From: Fimbriosthenelais zetlandica
Taxonomy: Eukaryota
NCBI GenBank assembly: GCA_977030845.1
Contig: OZ365116.1
Coordinates: 18,352,001-18,416,000, forward strand
DNA length: 64,000 nucleotides
Direction of reading: 5' to 3'
The notes under the pieces were generated by a model, which made no database searches, was not told the origin of the DNA, and worked only from the letters and a program-made list of their open reading frames with translations. The position numbers and the translations under genes are program-made. Position 1 is the first letter of the stretch, and every line of letters begins with the position of its first letter. Positions 1 through 14,740 of the stretch are shown here, in pieces.

Positions 1-3000
1 CCCGGTGCTAAAGAATCAGAAGTGTCTGACCCAGCGATCAGCTCGGCAGAAAAGGAAGCAGAGGAACCTTTGACTGATGGAAATAGTGAAAATCCTGAGA
101 AAGAAACACCAGCTTTGACGGAGGAACAACCCAGTAAACCACAAACAGAAACTACAGATAAGACAGAAGTGACAAAGGATTCCCCTGAGAATACTGACAA
201 GCTTGAAGACTCCACTGAGACTGAAGAGATGGATACCCTCCGTCACCTACAGTCATTGACAGAAACTGAGAAGGAAGGCACTGCTGAGGTCGAGCCAGAA
301 GACACAGATATTGATGCAGAGCCTGCAAATAAAGACAATATAGAGGAAAATGATGGACAAGATAATGACAAGGAATCCACTAAATCAGTTGAAGCAGATC
401 AAGAAAATAAACCAAGTGAAGAGGTCCCAGAAAAACAGGATGATCATTCAGTTGATGTCAACGATGGCAAGACTGAATCTGTCAAAGATGGCAATACTGA
501 ATCTGTTGAGGAAAGTGAAAAAACTGATAATGGAGAAGTGGCAATTGATGGAGAAAAAGAGAAGACTGAGGAAGGTGATGGTAATAGGGCAAAGGATGAT
601 GGAGAAGAACAGATGGACACCACACCTGCTGAGAACCCATCATCAACTGATGACAAGCCAGAGGAAAGCATTGAAAAAGGCAAGGATTCTACAAAAGAAG
701 ATAGAATGAAAAATAATGAGACAGTGAATGAAGATGTAGAAAAAGATGAAAAGGATACAGAATCCATTGATAAACCTGCCAGCTCTGACGAAAAAGAAAC
801 TGAAGTTATGGAAAAGGGAACAGAAAAGGCCTCTGAAGAAGCTACGGAGGAAAGTGAAACGAGTAATGAAGTAGGAGATAAATCCAATGATAAAGAGCCC
901 ATAGTTATGGACGATGATGAGGCAAGCACTGATGTTACTGAGGAGAAGTCAGGTGATGAGGACAAGGCTAAGGAAAGAAAGGTAGTTTACTTGTATAATC
1001 TTTACCCATTAGTTAATACCTCTTTTGTTATGTGATGAAATGATGGAAAGAATGTCCCACGTTATTTTAGCAGGAAAATAATATATAATTTTTAATTTCC
1101 CCCCAGCGGACGGATAGCACTCACAGTGAGGGCGACCCTATCACCAGTGTGACCATAGAGGATACGCTTTCTAAAGATATGGATAAAGGTATGGATAGGC
1201 CTAATGTCTATTATATCTGTGAATTTTTACATTGATTGTTTAGCTAGAACCTACTAAGACAATCGGGAATTTATCAGTTAAAACTTACTGCTTTAAATCA
1301 TTTTTTTCAGAATCAAAAGGTCCCAATATGAAGGGCGGGAGTAAGCAACCCAAGGCTTGCATTGTTTGTAAAAAGGTAAATAAATTAATAATTTTTCCAA
1401 TGTGTATTTCACATAATTATATGTTAGGGACTATGGACATGTATTATCCAGAATAGAACATCTACTCGTATCTGCATTCTTAACTTTAAACATTCTTTAA
1501 ACAATTAGGATTTTCCATCATGACTAGAAAAATATGACATTTTGAAATTCTTGATTGCAATAATAGTTGTTACATAACTAGGACATCTAACCACACTTGA
1601 GTTTTAGTTCACTTAAACTTGGAGGCTGGACAGGTTGGTTCGTCCAGGTGTGCATGGCAGCAATATAAAGCGGGTTCACTACTTTGGTTACCCTCTACTA
1701 GATGTGCTTGCGCCAACAAGTCTACCTTTTGACCTGCTGTTAAGCATACACCTATGCTTTGCTCAAAACATTAGACTGATATGAACTGAAGACGTCGTAA
1801 CAATGCATGATGTCACCTTGCACCTGAACCCAAAGAACATCAAAATCCTTGATTTTTTTTCTCCCGAATGAAATTCAAAATTGATTATGAAGTACATGCA
1901 CGCTGGATAAACAAACCATAATCATCTGTGGCCACAAAACGTTTGAGGCCAGTCTATCTAAATTGTTGTCACTGGACAGCATAATGCAATGTGCTATTTG
2001 TCGAAGATGATAGCTTCGATTCAGGCTGATTTTTCCCTCTCTTTTTCTCTTTCCTAAATTGACAGGTTTGCAAGTGCAAATATAACATAGTCCGAAATGG
2101 TGACGTCAAGCATCTGTGCGATGACAAGTGCTTCAAATCCTTTCGGTCGAGCCCCACCAAGTACCTCCGTTCTGAAGCCTCGGAGAAAGAAAAGGCCGCA
2201 GCACTGGAAGCTAGTAGCAACCTAAAGAAACTTAGCAACCTAAGTAAACAACAGTGTTGCACAACCTGTTCATCAATTTTCAATTTGAGCAGTATTTCTA
2301 AGTTTGAGGTGAAAAGTGGTAATATCAAACCATTTTGTTCAAACAAATGTCTTCAAGATAATAAGGCAGGTAGGAAACTATGTGGCTTTTGCAAGATGGA
2401 TATACAGGATTCAGCCGAGGCCATAATGGCTTCCATATATGATGACAATTTTCTAAGAAACTTCTGTAACAAACAGTGTCATGAACAATTTGAGGAAAAG
2501 AACAAAGATGTCTCAATCAATGAAAATGATGACGTAGTTGAGATACCAGATGACAATGACGTTTCTGTTTCTCCGACCCCGACCCCGACCCCGACTGGGA
2601 AGAAAAAGCCTGCCACTCCCCCAACTGTCACACAGCCAGACCAGAAAAAGTCTGCTGGATGTTCAGTGTGTCACAAAGTGCTGGAAGTGAAGCATGAAGT
2701 CACCTTTGATGGGAAATGCTTCACACTTTGTGGAGATTCTTGTTTCAATACCTTTAGATATGCCAATAAACTGGCCATGAACGAGTGCAGCTTTTGTGGG
2801 GCACATTGCTTCAGTGAGGGTAACAATCCCCATGCTATTCAGTTTGAGGGGCAAACGAAAAAATTCTGCTCTATGACTTGTATTAATGCTTTCAAAGTTG
2901 ATAAGTCCAAAACCGTTGCTTGCACCTGGTGCCAGGCCAAAAAGACCAACTTTGATATGATTGAGCGGGTGGATGCCAATAATAAGTACCAGTTATTCTG

Positions 3001-6000
3001 TTCTCTGAACTGCTTATCTCTGTATCGAGTGAACCTCCAGGCTACATCTAATCAGAGTGTGCCATGCGATCAGTGTAAGAGAACAGCCCCTGCACAGTAC
3101 CATCTCACCATGAGTGATGCATCAGTTAGAAATTTTTGTCAGTATAACTGTGTGATGGCCTTCCAAGCCCAATTCACTGCTCCAAGTAAAAATGCTACTC
3201 CACAAACACGACGACAAGGCGGCAAACCTACACAAGCTGCCATGCCATCTGTGACACCAGCCACCCGTCAAAGTGCACGACTACCAGCCAAGTCAACTAA
3301 ACAAGGTAACTTCACTTTTTTATTACATATTTTTGTATCTTTGTAGGAAACAGAGATGGGAGATGATGAAGAAGCTTGTGTCTGTCCAAAAGAACGGACG
3401 GAGGCAGTATCTGTGAGCAAAGAAGAAGGGACAGGAGAAACACCAGAGCAAGATGTGACTGAAAGTATAATCCATAATCCAGAAACACAGAGTACTAAAG
3501 AAGAAGCCACTGATCAATCTGTGTCCACGGAATCTGAAGTGAAATTTGAAATGCCGAAAGAAAATATTTTGTCTGACCAGAAAACGTCTCCTGGATCTGG
3601 TGAACAGATTGAGTCGGCCATGAAAAATACGGAAGAAACAGAAGAGATAGAAAAGTCAGACAGTACTGTTAAAGACAGCTTACAAAGTCAAAGTTTAAGC
3701 CAGGATTCAGCTGAAGGAACGGCTGAGATAGTTTCTGAGGAGAAACCAATTGACTCTGAAGTCCAGGATGCAAATGTTGCAAACCAGAAAGACAAACCGT
3801 CCAATGTACAGACCTTAACAGAAGACAAACCTGCCCTATTACAACGTAGTCCAGTAGAAAATGACAATTCACCTTGTAGAATGGAGTCGGTCTCCACTAA
3901 TAATGAATCTAGCCAATTAGAACCCAATGTAGCTATAGATAAAATACAGTCAGATGATCAATCATCTGCCGCACAAATAGATAAATTAGAATCGGACCAG
4001 AATGTTAATACTGTAGGTACTAAAGACAAAATAGCTTCAGTTGAAGGAAGTCAAGAATTAACTAGTCAAGTATTTGAAGACACTAATTCCAGTATCTCCT
4101 CTGCTAGCAAATCAGAAGTGTCTGATGTTCTAATGGACACCCAGGACCAAAGCAGCATTAACACAGTGCAAAGTGTTGAAGCCCCTAGCCCTAAAACTAC
4201 AGATGAACAGAAAGAAAAAACGACAGCTTCTATATGTTCACTAAAGGAGCTATGTACTCAAGCATTGTTATCACAGAGACGTGTTCACCCCTCCGACTCG
4301 TTCGCTGATCAAGTTGGTATTGGTCACATCCAGAGCCGGAGGGGCAGGGGGAGACCTCCTGGCAAGCACAAACACAAGAAAAGAGGCCGTAAGAGAGAGG
4401 ATGGGTTCAGTGATGATCCCAAAGATCCAGATTTCAGTTTACATGAAGCCTTAGAACTGATGCCCAAAAAACGAGGCCGGGGCCGAAAGCCGAAAGAAGG
4501 CGGATTGGTACTGAGTCTTAAAAGGGTGATGTCCACAGAAAGTGACAGCCCGGACCCTGATGATGAGGCAGGTCTGAGGAAATCAACACGTAGACGAACA
4601 CCCACCTATAAAGGTTTGATTATCAAGTTAGGATGAAATATAACAAGCCCAAAAACATGGGTTATTGACCAGGTGTTATGTATTGATATTGAAAAAAGGA
4701 TTGGTATGGATTTCTCTCAATGCCAAATGCTACTTTTATTTTATGTCAATTGGATTTCATATTTTTTCTCCCGACTAAAATAGCTATGTCTGCAATTATA
4801 AATTGGTTTGATATCTGTATTACAAAGACAATTTGGAATATATTTGTTATATTTTCAGTCAGCAGCATGACACAGAAATCTACAGGCAGTTCGGCCAATG
4901 TTCCTGTGATATCAAATGTTATGTCTCTAGCCAGTAATGACAGTAAGTAAATCTTTTAAGTTTAACCCTACTAAAGAAACCCTTCCTATCTCCTGGATTT
5001 TGAGACCCAATTTATCTCTAAATTAAATCTCTTTTAAATTTCAGGTAGTAAGGGAGCAGTACAGAACAGTACAAACAGTACTCAGGTAGGCCTACTTTTT
5101 TCCCCTCTATGTTAAAAAGAATTATAATTATGAACTAAATTTTTCATTACTACTATTACTGCCGTCATTACCAGTACCATTGTTTTCCTTGTAGGTGGGT
5201 GGGGTGCAGACAAGCAGCGTTGGTAGTCAAATAATAATACAACCACCGGCACCCAAGATTATGAGGAACAAGTCGATGCTGTGTAAACCATTCACCCAAA
5301 CCAAAGCAACTGCTTGCCGTCCGCACACTCAGAACAAGGAATGTCAGACAGGTGAGTATTTTAAAATTGCCCACTTTGATTGATTCCCTGACCATTTAAA
5401 ACAGTTTTGAATAAGCTTTCATTTCAATTTGACTTAAAGAATCTCACTAAATTTCAGATGAATCGAACGTCAATAAACCCGTGTTGGTTCCTGTACCAAT
5501 ACCAGTATATATACCAGTACCAATGGCGATGTACAATGTACCACAACCATACCCACTACCTATACCATTGCCAGTTCCTATACCATTCTTTGTTCCGACG
5601 ACCAAGAAAAATGCTGACGGTATATTAAAACACATCAAGGTGAGTAACGAAGTTTTATCTCTAGATTTTTGTATTTTTTTTGTATTCTGATAGATCTTGA
5701 TCTAGCCTTTCCATCATTGAAAATTTGATATATAACCTAAGTAAATAATATAAATATTTCTAGGAAATACAAGAGCGAATGCCAGCTGATCCATTTGAAG
5801 CCGAGCTTCTAATGATGGCTGAGGCGGTCGCTAGTGCTGATAAGTCAGACTCGAGTGACGAATCCGACGACGACGGTGGTAACGCCCCGGAACCAACATT
5901 TGACCCGTCCCTGCCTATGGCACCCAGCACACCACCCGGTGTGAACACTGCTAATGACATGGGTGAGGATATGTTGTCCATGGCGCTACGGATGGCGGAG

Positions 6001-8064
6001 ATGCCACCAGGAGATGAAGGGCAGCTTGACTTGGAGGATAGTATCCAGTCAACGCCCATCAGCCAGCCACCAGTGCAGCCATCACACGGTAAACCCTTTA
6101 CTTTAATACGAATCTGATCTCTCTACCAGATCCATTCATTGACATTCCAATATTCAATCTCTCAAATAAACATTTTCATCCAATTTTCCTCTTCTATGGC
6201 TTAATGTAAAATATTATTTTGTAAAATAAAAAAAGAAAAATTTGTATGAGGATTAAGAGATAAATTTCGTTATATCTCTTATGTGAAGTATAATATTTAA
6301 TCCTAAATTTTGTTAATTTACAGAAGTGTCCGTCACCGAGCCTGAGTTTAGCACCATTGACCAGAACAGTGAGATTTTATCAGCGTCCAGGGGTCGGGGA
6401 GGCTGGCGGGGCAAGCGCTCACGGAGAGGTCGTGGCAGCTCTTCCTCTCAACGAGCCAAGAAACCCAAAGTAGAACCAGCTGAATCCGAGCAAATTATGT
6501 CCGCACCCACCCCTGTCCTGCCCCCTCCTCCAGCCGATGCTAACATGGTGCTCAAATATTCATTTGGAGTAAATGCATGGAAGCATTGGGTGGTTCAGAA
6601 AAATACCCAGTTGGATAAAGCCAGTACTGGGAGGGGCAGGTTAAAACTTTTCAAAACCGATATATTACAATGCACCTCAGACGAATTGAACTATTCCCTA
6701 TGCCTGTTTGTAAAAGAAGTGAGGAAGCCGAATGGAGAGGAGTATGCACCTGACAGTATATATTACCTTTGCTTAGGTAAGTTGAGTGTGGGGCAAACCA
6801 CTTAGTTAAACTTAATGGTACTTAACTTCTCCGCTCACTGATTTTAAATTGTGACACATTCTGATATTGTACAAAGGATTCACCGAATTTCTTATTTTCC
6901 AGGTATACAACAGTATCTGTTTGAAAATGGTCGTATAGACAACATTTTCACAGATTTTTACTATGAAAAATTCACAGAATGTTTGAATGATATACTGCAA
7001 CGATATGAAGTGCGATTGAACACACTAGGTGAGTAAATATCCTGAATAAAGTAACAAACATTTCTGTAATTTCCCATGCGTCAGTAGTATAGACAAATGT
7101 ACATATTGCAAGGGAATTCCCAGAACAAAATTTGACTTGTACATGTACCCCGTTATCTGTCGCTTCAGGCCTGATTGTATGCCGAATAGAAGAGGAGCAC
7201 TTGTGGGAGTCTAAACAGCTTGGAGCTCACTCTCCCCATGTCCTCCTCAACACATTGGTCTACTTCAACACTAAGAGTTTCATGTTAAAAACAGCGGAGG
7301 AGCACATCCGACTCTCCTTCTCACACATCATGAAACACTGGAAGAAGACCAACATACCGGGTACCCGCACGCCCGGCCGCAGTGTCTACCTACGCTACTA
7401 CGCACCTGTCAGTGCTAAAGGTTAGTTCAACTAATTATATCTCAACGATACCATGAAAGATGGAAAGAATTCTATGATAATTTATTAAGTAATTTTCCTA
7501 ACTATAACATCTATATCGAGAGAAATTTTCGATATCCAAAAATCAGGAATATGTACTGATTAAAAGGCTCTTATTTCCAGAAAACTCCTCTAAGCGGAAG
7601 CGAGAAGAAGTACCAGTTTATGAGCAGGCTGAGAGTGTTGAAAATCCTCTGAGATGCCCTGTAAAGTTATACGAGTTTTACCTATCAAAATGGTGAGTCG
7701 ATGCTCTGCCTATCTATTTCCCTATGAGCTTACTCCTGAATACATAGGTTTAATCGAAAGCACGGTTTCGGGGTTAGAGATTTAAGAGTCATCTAGTTCA
7801 TATATAAAATGACCATTGACATATTCTCTCCACTAAAGTCTGATTCTCATGATTTTATTTGTTATTTTCAGCCCGGAGAGTATCAGAAATCGTAATGATG
7901 TGTTCTACTTGGTCCCTGAGCGTTCGTGTGTACCCGACTCTCCAGTCTGGTACTCCACAGCGTCCCTGGGTATCGACGCCATGACCAAGATGCTGAACCG
8001 TGTACGTGTGGTACGTGAGATACAAATGTCTCACATCCACCACACCCCCATGTACTCTAGCTGA
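1..8064 (+). CDS. ZMYM4: Zinc finger MYM-type protein (ZMYM2/3/4, Drosophila woc family), 5'-partial and multi-exon. Zinc-finger isoform exons: <1-981, 1107-1188, 1311-1375, 2066-3305, 4859-4942, 5045-5085, 5195-5351, 5458-5639, 5764-6088, 6324-6776, 6903-7028, 7169-7420, 7581-7692, 7872-8064
   Basis: Every junction is GT-AG and phases are consistent (4293 nt, divisible by 3). The protein has an acidic N-terminus, seven CxxC...CxxxC MYM fingers, and the family motifs VPVISNVMSLA, RNKSMLCKPFTQTKAT, the PVPIPVYIPVPM tract and MPADPFEAELLMMAE. The C-terminus is DUF3504 (LKYSFGVNAWKHWV, KPNGEEYAPDSIYYLCLGIQQYL, EEEHLWESKQLGAHSP, NPLRCPVKLYEFYLSKCP, PDSPVWYS). It is a co-ortholog of ZMYM2/3/4, so the symbol is approximate. 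Confidence 0.95.
2066..3305 (+). CDS. ZMYM exon carrying the MYM/FCS zinc-finger array (alternative exon A)
   Basis: Acceptor ttgacag at 2065 and donor caag|gtaac at 3305. Length 1240 nt (phase 0 in, 1 out). It completes the finger begun in exon 1311-1375 (CIVCKK|VCKC...LCDDKCF) and encodes six more. Confidence 0.92.
3347..4613 (+). CDS. ZMYM alternative exon B: about 422 aa acidic, Ser/Thr-rich disordered region ending in AT-hook-like basic motifs
   Basis: Acceptor tttgtag at 3346 and donor aaag|gtttga at 4613. Length 1267 nt with an open frame (phase 0 in, 1 out). Composition matches the protein's acidic N-terminal exon. Contains RRGRGRPPGK and KKRGRGRKPK. Confidence 0.75.
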
Positions 8065-12979: not shown

Positions 12980-14740
12980 ATGGCGTCGGCAACCCCTGAC
13001 AGGATGCTTTTCGAGGACCTCTTCTTATGTTCTATCTGCCTACAGCCGTTTGAAGCTCCTAAATTGCTGCCTTGCCTGCACAGCTTCTGTCGAAACTGCC
13101 TGAGCCGTCACTTTGAGATCGATGTCCTGCGGGTAGGTACCAGTGGGAGCCATAATAATCATGATCCAACAAGTCCTCAAGTATCCTGTCCTGCATGTAG
13201 GACCTTTGCCGTTGTTCCTGATGGCAGAGTCAGCTATTTCCATGATGATGTCTCTGTGGAAATGACTAAATCCTTTTTACTTGAATGTTTCGGTCGGATG
13301 GATGGGTTTGATGATACGAGTGACGTCCAGTGTGAGAATGAGGTGGTGGAGCTAGCTCAGCGACGACGTGAGTGGCTCAGGGAGAATGTCAAGACGATTC
13401 AGCAAAATCTTGTCGATCTGCGATCAAAGACGATGTATGTGGCCGTCTTGACGGATCATCTGCGTCGTGTTAAAGGCGATCAGACGAAGGTGATCGGAGA
13501 AACAGAGCCGGTCAATCACGCCCAGTTGTTCAAAGAGCTCAACATTAGCTTCCGGCCTGTCATCGCTCAGGTCGCTGACCATGCTGAGAAACTCTATGGG
13601 GCCGCCTGCAGGCAGAAGGCGGTGTATGGGTTGGTCGAAGAAATAGTGGAAAATGGAAGTGTAATACATGTAAACGCTGCGTATAACCCACTTAAGGATT
13701 TACTTCACGAATCGCGCGTCAGACCCCCGATCCTTGAGACAAATCTTCATCATATGGTGGCTGGTCTTAATGTCAATATGACCCAGGTCGACTCAGAGGT
13801 TCACCGAGCAAGTGCTGGCACTGAGCTTGATCTCCATCCACGGAAGAACCAGAAGCTGGCGGTCTCTCTCAGACTCTTATGTCGCCTCTCCAGATGTGGC
13901 GACAAACCGGGCCAGTTTAACTTCCCCATCCACGCCACTTTCCTACCTGATGGTGGTTTCATTGTTTGTGATAAGAAAAATCGCCGAATTCAGATCTTTG
14001 ACAAGATGGGAAGATTCAGTCAAGAGTTCATGAAGGGACGAATCAAACCAAGACGTGCTCGCCTGAACCCGGTGGATGGGTTATTGTACGTCAGTGATGA
14101 ACACACAGAGACAGTGAAGGTCTATACCATACATGGGGCATTCATCCGATCACTTGGAGAGAAGTACTTCATGTGTCCGGCTGGTCTTGATTTTGACACA
14201 CATGGCAATATCGTTGTAACCGATGCTGAAAAAGCCACAGTTATCGTCTACAGTCCTCAAGGCAGACGCATTAATAAATTCTGTTACGCCATTTTCCAGC
14301 CTAAGGTCCCATGTCCTTATTTCGCTGCGTGTAGCAAAGAAGATCACATCGTCGTATCCGACTATAGAAATAACACAGTACGATGTTTCACCTCACATGG
14401 CCGTGAGATGTTCTGCATTTCAGATCTGAAATGTCCACGGGGGGTCTGTATTGACAAGAGTGGCAATATTCTCATTGCTGAAGGCGATGGGCATAGAGTG
14501 GCGCTGTATTCACCATATGGTAAATTCCACCAGTATGTTCTCACTAAAGAAGATGGCCTCAATTACCCGATGTCGGTGGATATTGATGACGACCTGCGGG
14601 TTTTGGTCACTCAGTGTGGTCTGTATCATAATCATGAGGTCATGATGTTCCAGCTCACATATGGTACTGGACCGGGAAGCAAGTCTAAACCCAAAACCAA
14701 GACTGCAATGAAATCATTCAGCCAGATGTGTGAAGACTGA
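12980..14740 (+). CDS. TRIM2/3-like RING, coiled-coil and NHL-repeat E3 ubiquitin ligase (586 aa, intronless coding region, no clear B-box)
   Basis: ATG in atcATGG context at 12980. RING motif CSICLQPFEAPKLLPCLHSFCRNC...CPAC, a helical middle region, and six NHL repeats (GQFNFP..., CPAGLDFDTHGNIVVTD, CPRGVCIDKSGNILIAE, LNYPMSVDID). Confidence 0.9.
   Translation: MASATPDRMLFEDLFLCSICLQPFEAPKLLPCLHSFCRNCLSRHFEIDVLRVGTSGSHNNHDPTSPQVSCPACRTFAVVPDGRVSYFHDDVSVEMTKSFLLECFGRMDGFDDTSDVQCENEVVELAQRRREWLRENVKTIQQNLVDLRSKTMYVAVLTDHLRRVKGDQTKVIGETEPVNHAQLFKELNISFRPVIAQVADHAEKLYGAACRQKAVYGLVEEIVENGSVIHVNAAYNPLKDLLHESRVRPPILETNLHHMVAGLNVNMTQVDSEVHRASAGTELDLHPRKNQKLAVSLRLLCRLSRCGDKPGQFNFPIHATFLPDGGFIVCDKKNRRIQIFDKMGRFSQEFMKGRIKPRRARLNPVDGLLYVSDEHTETVKVYTIHGAFIRSLGEKYFMCPAGLDFDTHGNIVVTDAEKATVIVYSPQGRRINKFCYAIFQPKVPCPYFAACSKEDHIVVSDYRNNTVRCFTSHGREMFCISDLKCPRGVCIDKSGNILIAEGDGHRVALYSPYGKFHQYVLTKEDGLNYPMSVDIDDDLRVLVTQCGLYHNHEVMMFQLTYGTGPGSKSKPKTKTAMKSFSQMCED

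What the first reader, a model, noticed from the sequence alone, without database searches (positions are those of the whole stretch)
2066..4613. Giant mutually exclusive exons may swap the ZMYM zinc-finger array for an acidic, AT-hook module
Seen in sequence: exon A (2066-3305, 1240 nt, MYM fingers) and exon B (3347-4613, 1267 nt) are both 3n+1 long, phase 0 in and phase 1 out. They lie between a phase-0 donor (1375, or 981) and a phase-1 acceptor (4859), and only 41 nt separates them. Including both shifts the frame to TGA at 3364. Retaining the 41-nt intron stops at TAG 3344-3346. Skipping both also breaks the frame. Established: a very short donor-to-branch-point distance sterically enforces mutual exclusion, as in alpha-tropomyosin, but such exons are normally small homologous duplicates. 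Here they are about 1.25 kb and unrelated. Exon A also has a SIM-like DDVVEIPDD, and exon B has a psi-K-x-E site (VKFE) plus RGRGRPP and RGRGRKP motifs. Inference: one gene makes both a zinc-finger ZMYM/Woc and a finger-less, AT-hook DUF3504 protein. The latter resembles the architecture vertebrates encode with the separate paralog QRICH1.
Basis: partly seen in the sequence, partly recalled or inferred. Interest (0 to 1): 0.8.

Follow-up and report, generated by a model that had tools for sequence, protein, structure and literature searches.

The report
Swappable giant exons in WOC/ZMYM
In an invertebrate chromatin-regulator gene, two unrelated giant exons (a zinc-finger array and an acidic AT-hook tail) sit 41 bases apart in a layout, kept in three distant species, that lets only one be used per messenger, but no RNA data could be checked.

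Summary
I first suspected an artefact: a CAG 7 nt further on (exon start 3354) gives a 48-nt in-frame intron and an open A+B reading.

- Exon B is a real coding exon. It occurs only in this clade, always 41-60 nt after exon A's donor.
- In all three species the first AG, the only strong acceptor, sits at phase 0 of B. That fits exon 3's donor and clashes with A's phase-1 donor.
- The in-frame AGs score like background and are expected by chance.
- The gene's 13 other introns are at least 101 nt long.
- All annotated relatives examined join A directly to the next exon.

New here: the intron before A holds invariant blocks that base-pair with both ends of exon A. The pairing with A's 3' end shows compensatory changes and would loop A out.

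Best reading (about 0.6): A and B are mutually exclusive. This gives a canonical finger protein and a finger-less AT-hook/DUF3504 protein.

No sequencing run was listed, so no transcript evidence exists. Fly woc orthologues are annotated with a similar finger-less isoform made from an alternative first exon.

The parts
1..981 (+). Acidic N-terminal coding exon (cut by the window start); donor AAG|gtagtt after 981, phase 0
   Evidence: ORF 22-1035; phase computed
1107..1188 (+). Exon 2 (82 nt, phase 0 in, phase 1 out)
   Evidence: Splice sites read; the models are open
1311..1375 (+). Exon 3 (65 nt), ending ..ACIVCKK| at phase 0. It carries the first half of the first MYM finger, which exon A completes
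   Evidence: homologous exon and phase in L001 and L002
1634..1662 (+). E1: intronic block with a 16-nt core (1642-1657) invariant in three species. It holds UGCAUG and is complementary to the 3' end of exon A (candidate docking site)
1795..1827 (+). E2: intronic block with a 13-nt core (1805-1817) invariant in three species. It holds UGCAUG (AGCAUG in L002) and is complementary to the 5' end of exon A
1887..1917 (+). E3: weaker E1 complement (core ACATGCAC at 1894-1901), 157-184 nt before A's acceptor in the three species; tentative selector for A
   Evidence: The energy exceeds the level of the E1 x A-3' shuffles only in L002; E1 x E3 itself was not shuffled
2066..3305 (+). Exon A: MYM zinc-finger array, 1240 nt, phase 0 in, phase 1 out
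   Evidence: orthologous in molluscs and an annelid
2070..2122 (+). Partner of E2 inside the 5' end of exon A (codes NGDVKHLCD of finger 1)
   Evidence: dG -33.6; 0 of 500 shuffles reach it
3235..3262 (+). Partner of E1 inside the 3' end of exon A (core CCATGC at 3240, 65 nt before A's donor, about 100 nt before B's acceptor); candidate selector for B
   Evidence: dG -41.4; 0 of 500 shuffles; compensatory changes
3306..3346 (+). 41-nt gap made of A's donor (gtaac), a pyrimidine tract and B's acceptor (tag). It has no internal AG, and its in-frame TAG at 3344-3346 blocks read-through
   Evidence: homologous gaps of 47 nt (L001) and 60 nt (L002)
3347..4613 (+). Exon B: acidic, serine-rich region plus a conserved C-terminal module; 1267 nt, phase 0 in, phase 1 out; weak donor AAG|gtttga
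   Evidence: 0 stops in frame against 25-52 in the other two + strand frames; homologues in L001 and L002; the last 130 codons have pN 0.20 against pS 0.83
3352..3353 (+). Second AG (aaCAG), which would join A to B' in frame (rival reading)
   Evidence: acceptor score -1.2 bits against 10.2 for the first AG
4337..4396 (+). AT-hook-like motif 1 (RRGRGRPPGK plus a basic run)
   Evidence: GRP core invariant in three species; not called by Pfam
4466..4495 (+). AT-hook-like motif 2 (KKRGRGRKPK here; a GRP core in both relatives)
4502..4612 (+). Conserved hydrophobic run plus acidic-serine tract (LVLSL..SDSPD), then a basic tail RKSTRRRTPTYK ending at the donor
4859..4942 (+). Next exon (phase 1 in), coding ..VPVISNVMSLAS. 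In the annotated relatives examined it follows exon A directly
6324..8064 (+). C-terminal exons with the QRICH1 domain and DUF3504 (Crypton-derived); stop at 8062-8064

Best explanation
The window holds the single WOC/ZMYM orthologue of a lophotrochozoan, most likely a mollusc. In this lineage and two distant relatives, a second giant coding exon (B) lies 41-60 nt behind the zinc-finger exon (A). B is an acidic region ending in two AT-hook-like motifs. Exon 3's phase-0 donor can be spliced to A's acceptor or to B's acceptor. A's phase-1 donor and B's phase-1 donor both fit the next exon. I propose three layers of control. First, A's donor and B's branch point and acceptor are too close to be spliced to each other (steric block). 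Second, joining both exons, or neither, breaks the frame (a decay safety net). Third, the choice is steered by conserved RNA pairings: block E1 in the upstream intron pairs with the last 45-70 nt of exon A, and block E2 pairs with A's first 55 nt. Together these loop out or occlude exon A and bring exon 3's donor next to B's acceptor. UGCAUG motifs lie inside both blocks, so an RBFOX-type protein or another competitor for these arms could decide whether the loop forms. The products would be a canonical finger-containing WOC/ZMYM protein and a finger-less, AT-hook-bearing QRICH1/DUF3504 protein. Shown here: the anatomy, the phases, that B is coding, their conservation, and the complementarity with covariation. 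Inferred: which junctions are actually used, the steric limit in this animal, and the direction of regulation.
For: 1. All arithmetic is confirmed, and exactly one of A or B keeps the frame when the strong acceptor is used.
2. B is coding. It has 0 in-frame stops against 25-64 in the other two + strand frames in three species. Its last 130 codons have pN 0.20 against pS 0.83. Two near-identical copies (L002, L003) differ by 9 synonymous and 8 non-synonymous changes.
3. The phase pattern is the same in the window, L001 and L002: exon 3 donor phase 0, A 0 to 1, B 0 to 1, next acceptor phase 1. Synonymous sites are saturated. In L002 the A and B frames differ on the DNA, which rules out read-through there.
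4. The first AG scores 9.6-10.2 bits, inside the range of the gene's true acceptors (9.0-15.7). The in-frame AGs score -0.6 to -1.7. None of the 13 other acceptors has an AG within 14 nt upstream. An in-frame AG within 5 codons is expected by chance in 49-58% of cases per species.
5. The gap is 41, 47 and 60 nt, against 101-690 nt for the other 13 introns. Any branch point inside it lies below the roughly 50-nt donor-to-branch-point limit cited in PMC7969005 and PMC5740500.
6. The annotated relatives examined have no room for B between A and the next exon, so the A-only product is the ancestral protein.
7. E1 and E2 are invariant in three species, while the intron after B has no conserved block.
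8. E1 pairs with the 3' end of A at -41.4, -39.8 and -29.1 kcal/mol; 0, 0 and 65 of 500 shuffles reach these values. E2 pairs with the 5' end of A at -33.6, -33.7 and -24.5; 0, 0 and 4 of 500 shuffles reach them.
9. Three of the four pairs flanking the E1 core show compensatory double changes and none is broken, including a synonymous GCT to GCC change matched by A to G in E1.
10. No conserved phase-0 donor lies inside A, and no start-codon mini-exon lies in the upstream intron.
11. Fly woc orthologues are annotated with a finger-less AT-hook/DUF3504 isoform.
Against: No transcript evidence of any kind is available: none of the sequencing-run searches listed a run, and no transcript-derived protein spanning B was found. 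An in-frame AG lies 7, 13 and 10 nt after the first AG in all three species, so A+B' remains possible. The B-only product would keep half of the first MYM finger (CIVCKK) from exon 3. The 50-nt steric limit was measured in vertebrates, and animals with short introns splice 40-60-nt introns routinely. The limit for this genome rests only on this one gene's 13 introns. Only three species carry B and they form one clade, so features they share, including E1 and E2, are not independent of each other. In L002 the E1 duplex is not better than shuffles by energy (65 of 500). The E1 x E3 pairing stands above the level of the E1 x A-3' shuffles only in L002 (E1 x E3 itself was not shuffled). Full-length fly Woc has fingers and AT hooks in one chain.
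Confidence: 0.6

Rival explanations
1. A and B are consecutive exons of one mRNA. A tiny intron (48 nt here, 60 or 69 nt in L001, 70 nt in L002) is removed using the second or third AG, giving a protein with fingers followed by the acidic/AT-hook region, as in fly Woc. B' (1260 nt, 3n, phase 1 to 1) could then also behave as an ordinary cassette exon.
For: A + B' (3354-4613) is open over 1843 codons. An in-frame AG exists within 13 nt of the first AG in all three species. B' is a symmetric 3n exon. Fly Woc and sandfly ZMYM4 carry AT hooks just after the fingers in the same chain. This is the more ordinary reading a priori.
Against: The in-frame AGs score -0.6 to -1.7 bits, against 9.6-10.2 for the first AG. 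Each would have a perfect decoy AG 7-10 nt upstream, which none of the 13 other acceptors of the gene has (nearest is 14 nt). Their presence is expected by chance, about 15% jointly. The decoy with its pyrimidine tract is kept at phase 0 of B in three species with saturated dS. This reading gives no role to the helices that loop out exon A.
Confidence: 0.2
2. The conserved pairings between the intron and exon A are not splice selectors. They could instead be editing-complementary sequences that guide ADAR A-to-I recoding within exon A, or they could promote back-splicing of exon A into a circular RNA. The A/B choice would then be governed by something else. This rival concerns the mechanism only and is compatible with either splicing pattern.
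For: Strong, conserved exon-intron duplexes of 10-25 bp are the classic signature of ADAR sites (established knowledge). The exonic arms contain adenosines. The arms bracket A's acceptor and end 45-70 nt before its donor.
Against: E1's target sits a conserved 62-71 nt before A's donor and about 100-135 nt before B's acceptor, in a fast-evolving linker with no conserved protein motif. That placement suits a selector. Back-splicing normally needs the 3' arm to lie after the donor. Neither alternative explains the conserved phase clash or the short gap.
Confidence: 0.2
3. B is joined at its phase-0 acceptor to some other upstream exon, such as an alternative first exon or promoter outside the window or exon 1 (donor 981), rather than to exon 3. 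The finger-less protein would then have a different N-terminus, as in the fly X3 isoform.
For: Donor 981 is also phase 0. Fly orthologues make their finger-less isoform from an alternative first exon. The window begins inside exon 1, so upstream exons are unseen.
Against: No start-codon mini-exon with a phase-0 donor exists in the upstream intron in any of the three species. The E1 and E2 looping geometry brings exon 3's donor, not a distant promoter, next to B.
Confidence: 0.08
4. B is a terminal coding exon or a separate embedded gene. Its reading frame ends 1-10 codons after the proposed donor, and it is never joined to 4859.
For: The ORF stops soon after the donor in all three species. B's donor is weak: 0.7 bits in the window, with T at +3 in all three species.
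Against: The exon ends AAG|GTT at phase 1 in all three species, matching the next acceptor. Another constitutive donor of this gene is also GTTAGT. B is open from its acceptor with no conserved start codon: the first Met falls at codon 4, about 75 and about 105.
Confidence: 0.04

Closest known systems
Alpha-tropomyosin exons 2/3 and OGDH exons 4a/4b (mutual exclusion by donor-to-branch-point proximity)
   Same: Two adjacent alternative exons whose intervening intron places the second exon's branch point below the roughly 50-nt steric limit from the first exon's donor. The intron size is held short over long evolutionary time (PMC7969005; PMC5740500).
   Different: Those pairs are short, homologous duplicates encoding the same part of the fold. 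Here the exons are 1.2-2.0 kb, unrelated in sequence, and encode different modules. The whole intron is 41-60 nt. Splicing is unverified.
Docking-site/selector competing RNA structures (Dscam, 14-3-3xi and similar clusters)
   Same: A highly conserved intronic element just after the constitutive exon is complementary to a sequence lying about 100 nt before an alternative exon. Pairing would loop out the exon in between. Covariation supports the duplex.
   Different: Only two exons are involved. The selector for B lies inside exon A's coding sequence. The selector for A (E3) is weakly supported. The lineage is lophotrochozoan. No functional test exists.
C. elegans egl-15 exons 5A/5B and unc-32 exons 7a/7b (RBFOX-controlled mutually exclusive exons)
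   Same: A conserved UGCAUG in the intron upstream of one alternative exon, where RBFOX binding represses that exon (PMC3585155).
   Different: Here the UGCAUG motifs are embedded in pairing arms, so they may be a by-product of complementarity to exonic CCATGC and AAGCAT. No RBFOX data are available.
Drosophila woc (fly WOC/ZMYM orthologue), full-length and RefSeq isoform X3; vertebrate QRICH1
   Same: It belongs to the same gene family (MYM fingers plus QRICH1/DUF3504; PMC3212892). Fly X3 (710 aa) is a finger-less AT-hook/DUF3504 product of the same gene. QRICH1 is a finger-less paralogue.
   Different: Flies use an alternative first exon and keep their AT hooks in both isoforms. Vertebrates use a separate gene. 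Here the AT hooks would be exclusive to the finger-less isoform, and the switch is an internal exon swap.

Membership tests
WOC/ZMYM gene family | Array of MYM-type (zf-FCS/TRASH) zinc fingers | tested here: met
   Pfam zf-FCS at 9.9e-18 (3 stretches) and TRASH_ZMYM4 at 5e-10 in exon A
WOC/ZMYM gene family | C-terminal QRICH1 domain plus DUF3504 (Crypton-derived) | tested here: met
   PF25561 at 2.3e-29 (6326-6805) and PF12012 at 2.3e-28 (7132-7425); family definition from PMC3212892
WOC/ZMYM gene family | Collinear similarity to annotated orthologues | tested here: met
   Sinanodonta, Haliotis, Mya, Nucella and Owenia proteins map exon by exon onto 2063-8055
Mutually exclusive exons | Transcripts join each exon to both flanking exons and never, or only unproductively, to each other | not testable with these tools
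   No sequencing run was listed for this stretch; no transcript-derived protein was found
Mutually exclusive exons | Including both or neither breaks the frame; including one keeps it | tested here: met
   A-only and B-only are open; A+B through the strong acceptor stops at codon 789; skipping both stops at codon 373; same phases in L001 and L002
Mutually exclusive exons | Steric criterion: donor-to-branch-point distance under about 50 nt | tested here: met
   The whole gap is 41, 47 and 60 nt with no internal AG. The threshold comes from vertebrate work, so its value in this animal is unknown. The other introns of the gene are at least 101 nt
Mutually exclusive exons | Alternative exons are homologous duplicates of similar length (classical type) | tested here: not met
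   A is a finger array and B has no Pfam family, and searches with A and with B found no shared homologues apart from P0001, the read-through ORF that holds both exons in turn. A and B were not compared with each other directly. Lengths match here (1240 and 1267 nt) but not in L002 (1366 and 2029 nt). Hatje et al. note that annotated MXEs without homology exist
Docking-site/selector RNA switch | Conserved intronic docking element complementary to a site upstream of each alternative exon | tested here: inconclusive
   E1 against the site before B: strong in two species, and an 11-nt perfect match in the third. E1 against E3, before A: stands above the level of the E1 x A-3' shuffles only in L002 (E1 x E3 itself was not shuffled)
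Docking-site/selector RNA switch | Compensatory substitutions keep the duplex | tested here: met
   Flank pairs are C-G/C-G/G-C, A-U/G-C/C-G, G-C in all three, and C-G/C-G/U-A; none is broken. Only three species were available
Docking-site/selector RNA switch | Disrupting and restoring the pairing changes exon choice | not testable with these tools
   Needs minigene or genome-editing experiments
AT-hook | GRP core flanked by Arg/Lys | tested here: met
   RGRGRPPGK, with GRPPG invariant in three species. The second hook has a GRP core in L001 and L002 but reads RGRKP in the window
AT-hook | Match to the curated AT_hook profile (PF02178) | tested here: not met
   No AT_hook hit even at E up to 10. 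The profile is very short, so this is weak evidence. A language-model look-alike cluster carries PF02178 at score 0.70, which is a lead only
RBFOX-regulated exon | Conserved (U)GCAUG in a flanking intron | tested here: met
   Two sites, 261-454 nt before A, are kept in three species. TGCATG occurs 0.31 times per kb in the window
RBFOX-regulated exon | RBFOX binding and dependence | not testable with these tools
   No CLIP or knock-down data are available

The most novel reading that the evidence does not exclude
A lophotrochozoan clade has turned its single WOC/ZMYM gene into a two-state switch. A docking-site/selector-type RNA duplex, whose selector lies inside coding sequence, works together with a sterically unspliceable 41-60-nt gap. 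The switch swaps a 1.2-kb MYM zinc-finger array for an unrelated 1.3-2.0-kb acidic AT-hook module on a shared QRICH1/DUF3504 body. One gene thereby yields both a ZMYM-like and a QRICH1-like chromatin factor. This would be mutually exclusive splicing of giant, non-homologous exons that exchanges whole DNA- and chromatin-targeting modules rather than fine-tuning one fold.
Probability: 0.4. Interest if true: 0.8.

Novelty: new variant of a known kind. Interest (0 to 1): 0.66.

Why it matters
Mutually exclusive exons are generally thought of as short duplicated exons that modulate one structural element. A conserved pair of kilobase-sized, unrelated exons that exchanges a SUMO- and chromatin-reading finger array for an AT-hook DNA-binding tail would show the same machinery doing domain swapping. 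That machinery is a steric block, a frame check and competing RNA structure. It would also add a docking/selector-like system in a lophotrochozoan. For WOC/ZMYM biology, it suggests that the split between finger-bearing ZMYM proteins and finger-less QRICH1 recurs across lineages by different routes: gene duplication in vertebrates, an alternative promoter in flies, and an exon swap here. The covarying E1 duplex with exon A gives a precise, cheap target for compensatory-mutation tests.

Tried and rejected
1. Artefact hypothesis, my starting view. The CAG at 3353 gives an in-frame 48-nt intron. I downgraded it after acceptor scoring, the AG-exclusion comparison and the chance estimate, and because in L002 A and B lie in different DNA frames.
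2. Read-through of the gap as one 2.5-kb exon. It is open only in L001, where P0001 is exactly that ORF. It is blocked by TAG here and by TGA plus a frame change in L002.
3. RNA evidence. Both sequencing-run searches listed nothing, so read laying could not be used.
4. More B-bearing species. Protein searches with B, with P0001's B part and with a three-species B profile found only the loci already in hand. Metagenome scans with the E1...E2 pattern and with the B profile found nothing. The loci of P0014, P0002, P0062 and P0003 lack a B-like ORF.
5. An alternative phase-0 donor inside A: none is conserved.
6. An alternative first coding exon in the upstream intron: none found.
7. Rfam on 900-5200: only a sub-threshold chance hit.
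8. E1 pairing with E2's flank as a local hairpin: there is no compensatory support, so I did not rely on it.
I used a joined-segment alifold in a script instead.
10. The ESM Atlas look-up of B's tail gave only low-score leads.

Full report
**1. What is there**

The + strand of 1-8064 encodes the C-terminal 1,400-1,850 residues of a WOC/ZMYM protein. The parts, in order, are:
- an acidic N-terminal exon, cut by the window start;
- two small exons (1107-1188 and 1311-1375);
- exon A (2066-3305), with MYM zinc fingers (Pfam zf-FCS 1e-17, TRASH_ZMYM4 5e-10);
- exon B (3347-4613), with no Pfam family;
- ten further exons, including a QRICH1 domain and DUF3504.

The best annotated relatives are mollusc ZMYM-like proteins (Sinanodonta, Haliotis, Mya, Nucella) and an annelid one (Owenia). 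They map exon by exon onto the window. WOC/ZMYM/QRICH1 is a known bilaterian family built on a domesticated Crypton recombinase (PMC3212892).

**2. The observation**

- A is 1240 nt, B is 1267 nt, and the gap is 41 nt.
- Donors 981 and 1375 are phase 0. Acceptor 4859 is phase 1.
- A plus B at 3347 runs into TGA 3364.
- Retaining the gap stops at TAG 3344.
- Skipping both exons stops at once.
- A-only (1423 codons) and B-only (1432 codons) are open to the natural stop.

**3. The obvious rival**

A and B lie in the same DNA frame. A second AG (aaCAG, exon start 3354) gives a 48-nt intron, which is a multiple of three. The resulting A+B' reading is fully open over 1843 codons. Fly Woc and a sandfly ZMYM4 carry AT hooks right after the fingers in the same chain, so such a product would be unremarkable.

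**4. Relatives change the picture**

A search with exon A found P0001, an ORF on a genomic Logan contig (L001). Its A part is 75% identical to the window. It runs straight through a 47-nt gap into a B homologue with 43% identity overall and 71% over the last 131 residues.

A second relative has a 679-codon B homologue 60 nt after exon A. It is represented by two near-identical contigs, L002 and L003, and its A part is 66% identical to the window.

B is clearly coding:
- it has 0 in-frame stops against 25-64 in the other two + strand frames in each species;
- its C-terminal module is conserved, with two GRP-type hooks, a DPDF motif, a hydrophobic run plus acidic-serine tract, and a basic tail;
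- its last 130 codons have pN 0.20 against pS 0.83;
- L002 and L003 differ by 9 synonymous and 8 non-synonymous changes.

Synonymous sites between the species are saturated, so neutral sequence has been fully turned over.

B is absent elsewhere. The five annotated full-length relatives mapped onto the window have only about 40 residues between the end of A and the homologue of exon 5195-5351. One transcript-like entry joins A directly to the next exon. Four other genomic loci have no B-like ORF after A. So the A-only mRNA encodes the ancestral protein, and B is a clade-specific addition.

**5. Which acceptor serves B?**

The phase pattern is the same in all three species: exon 3's donor is phase 0, A runs from phase 0 to 1, B from its first AG runs from phase 0 to 1, and the next acceptor is phase 1.

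| Species | Gap (nt) | Result of joining A to B at the first AG |
|---|---|---|
| Window | 41 | TGA six codons after the junction codon |
| L001 | 47 | GGA then TGA |
| L002 | 60 | TGA after 12 codons |

In L002 the two ORFs are in different DNA frames. Neither read-through nor a multiple-of-three intron can apply there.

I built a position matrix from 17 acceptors of this gene. It scores the first AG at 10.2, 9.6 and 10.1 bits, inside the range of the true sites (9.0-15.7). The in-frame AGs, which lie 7, 13 and 10 nt downstream, score -0.6 to -1.7.

None of the 13 other acceptors has an AG within 14 nt upstream. The rival reading needs a perfect decoy 7-10 nt upstream in every species.

The in-frame AGs carry no weight of their own. 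B is rich in xxA|Gxx codon boundaries (13-16%), so one within five codons is expected in 49-58% of cases per species.

No conserved phase-0 donor exists inside A. No start-codon mini-exon with a phase-0 donor exists in the upstream intron. The only productive route into B that uses the strong acceptor is therefore from exon 3, or from exon 1, with A skipped.

**6. Why A and B would not be joined**

The gap has no internal AG. It is far shorter than the gene's 13 other introns, which run 101-690 nt with a median near 125. Any branch point inside it lies under the roughly 50-nt donor-to-branch-point limit used to explain steric mutual exclusion in vertebrate genes (PMC7969005 and PMC5740500).

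The limit in this animal is unknown, so this step is inference. If the gap is spliced anyway, the product is frame-shifted. The frame therefore acts as a second safeguard, as in many human cases.

**7. A new element: conserved pairings that loop out exon A**

The intron between exon 3 and A contains blocks that are invariant in all three species, although the intron after B has none.

| Block | Core sequence | Window position | Distance before A's acceptor (window, L001, L002) |
|---|---|---|---|
| E1 | GTCCAGGTGTGCATGG | 1642-1657 | 414, 401, 454 nt |
| E2 | GCATGATGTCACC | 1805-1817 | 261, 245, 316 nt |

Neither block is present in the B-less loci.

I scanned each species from exon 3 to the exon after B. 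In the window and L001, E1's best partner is the 3' end of exon A; in L002 that site is a near-tied second, at -29.0 against -29.2 kcal/mol for the E3 site within the same intron. E2's best partner is the 5' end of exon A in all three species.

| Pairing | Window | L001 | L002 |
|---|---|---|---|
| E1 x 3' end of A (kcal/mol) | -41.4 | -39.8 | -29.1 |
| Shuffles reaching it, of 500 | 0 | 0 | 65 |
| E2 x 5' end of A (kcal/mol) | -33.6 | -33.7 | -24.5 |
| Shuffles reaching it, of 500 | 0 | 0 | 4 |

In the window the E1 pairing runs 1634-1662 against 3235-3262.

The E1 core GCAUGG pairs with an exonic CCAUGC that lies 62-71 nt before A's donor in every species. The flanking pairs change in a compensatory way:

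| Flank pair | Window | L001 | L002 |
|---|---|---|---|
| 1 | C-G | C-G | G-C |
| 2 | A-U | G-C | C-G |
| 3 | G-C | G-C | G-C |
| 4 | C-G | C-G | U-A |

One of these is a synonymous GCT to GCC change in the exon matched by A to G in E1. The exonic arm sits in a fast-evolving linker with no conserved protein motif, so the constraint there is on the RNA.

The arcs nest: E1 ( E2 ( A acceptor ) 5' end of A ... ) 3' end of A. Formed together, they would occlude A's acceptor, loop out nearly the whole exon, and place exon 3's donor about 100-135 nt from B's acceptor. This is the logic of docking-site/selector systems.

A third block, E3 (core ACATGCAC, 157-184 nt before A), can also pair with E1. 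It is strong only in L002, so a second selector is tentative.

Both E1 and E2 contain UGCAUG, the RBFOX motif. In worms, RBFOX bound upstream of one of two mutually exclusive exons represses that exon (PMC3585155). Here the motif may merely mirror the exonic sequence.

Two rival readings of the helices cannot be excluded without RNA data: ADAR editing guides, or promotion of a circular RNA.

**8. Products and precedent**

The A form is the canonical WOC/ZMYM protein. The B form would keep the acidic N-terminus and the QRICH1/DUF3504 body, lose the fingers, and gain two AT-hook-like motifs. It would retain an orphan CIVCKK half-finger from exon 3.

'AT hook' is a motif-level call. Pfam does not report it.

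RefSeq annotates, in two Drosophila species, a 710-residue isoform X3 of the woc orthologue. It consists of 9 residues of its own followed by residues 1021-1721 of the full protein. That makes it finger-less, with the AT hooks and DUF3504. The family therefore does make a finger-less isoform elsewhere, by another route.

**9. Verdict**

Comparative anatomy, splice-site strength, intron size and a covarying RNA structure all point to mutual exclusion, at about 0.6. No transcript was seen. The in-frame second AG keeps the ordinary A+B' reading alive, at about 0.2. The case is a new variant of known kinds: steric and frame-enforced mutually exclusive exons, and docking/selector RNA structures. 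It is unusual for the size and unrelatedness of the exons and for having a selector inside coding sequence.

Noticed in passing
window 1634-1662, 1795-1827, 1887-1917 with 2070-2122 and 3235-3262; L001 595-623, 759-791; L002 9107-9135, 9261-9284, 9394-9428: Invariant intronic blocks E1 and E2 (and a weaker E3) are complementary to both ends of exon A, with compensatory changes for E1. I use it above as support, but it could also mark ADAR editing sites or circular-RNA formation.
   Followed up: yes
proteins P0155, P0162 against P0164 (Drosophila kikkawai and D. serrata woc orthologues): RefSeq isoform X3 (710 aa) is 9 residues of its own plus residues 1021-1721 of the full protein. It is a finger-less AT-hook/DUF3504 isoform made from an alternative first exon.
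   Followed up: partly
window 4502-4567 (B residues 386-407) and homologues in L001 and L002: A conserved hydrophobic run LV(L/M)xL is followed by an acidic tract with SDSxD. This resembles a phospho-regulated SUMO-interaction motif and is kept in all three species.
   Followed up: partly
window 3262-3305 against 4568-4613: The last residues of A (..TRQSARLPAKSTKQ|G) and of B (..RKSTRRRTPTYK|G) both end AAG|GT at phase 1 and share a T/R-R-Q/K-S-x-R flavour, which also appears at the end of A in distant relatives (YGTRQSTRG, YGTRKSFKG). B's 3' end and donor might be a diverged duplicate of A's. The stretch is too short to test.
   Followed up: no
window 4614 and 7421; L001 3497; L002 13033: B's donor has T at +3 in all three species (GTTTGA, GTTTGG, GTTAGG). 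A constitutive donor of the same gene is GTTAGT, so GTT donors seem tolerated in this lineage.
   Followed up: partly
L005 205-2775 (minus strand), upstream of the ZMYM homologue: A gene with RRM_1 and NOPS domains (SFPQ/NONO/PSPC1-like) lies head to head with the ZMYM homologue. This is the same neighbourhood the Crypton paper describes for vertebrate ZMYM2-PSPC1. The window starts inside exon 1, so it cannot be checked here.
   Followed up: no
L002 and L003 (same ENA assembly, two contigs of 6.7 and 4.8 Mb): The whole locus is present twice at about 99% identity, then diverges sharply after position 13000 (240 differences in 500 nt). These are either haplotigs with an indel or a recent duplication.
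   Followed up: no
window 3356-3400: In the window only, the B-only junction would read CIVCKK-ETEMGDDEEACVCPKE, giving C-x2-C ... C-x-C. The Cys pair in B is absent from L001 and L002, so it is probably chance.
   Followed up: partly
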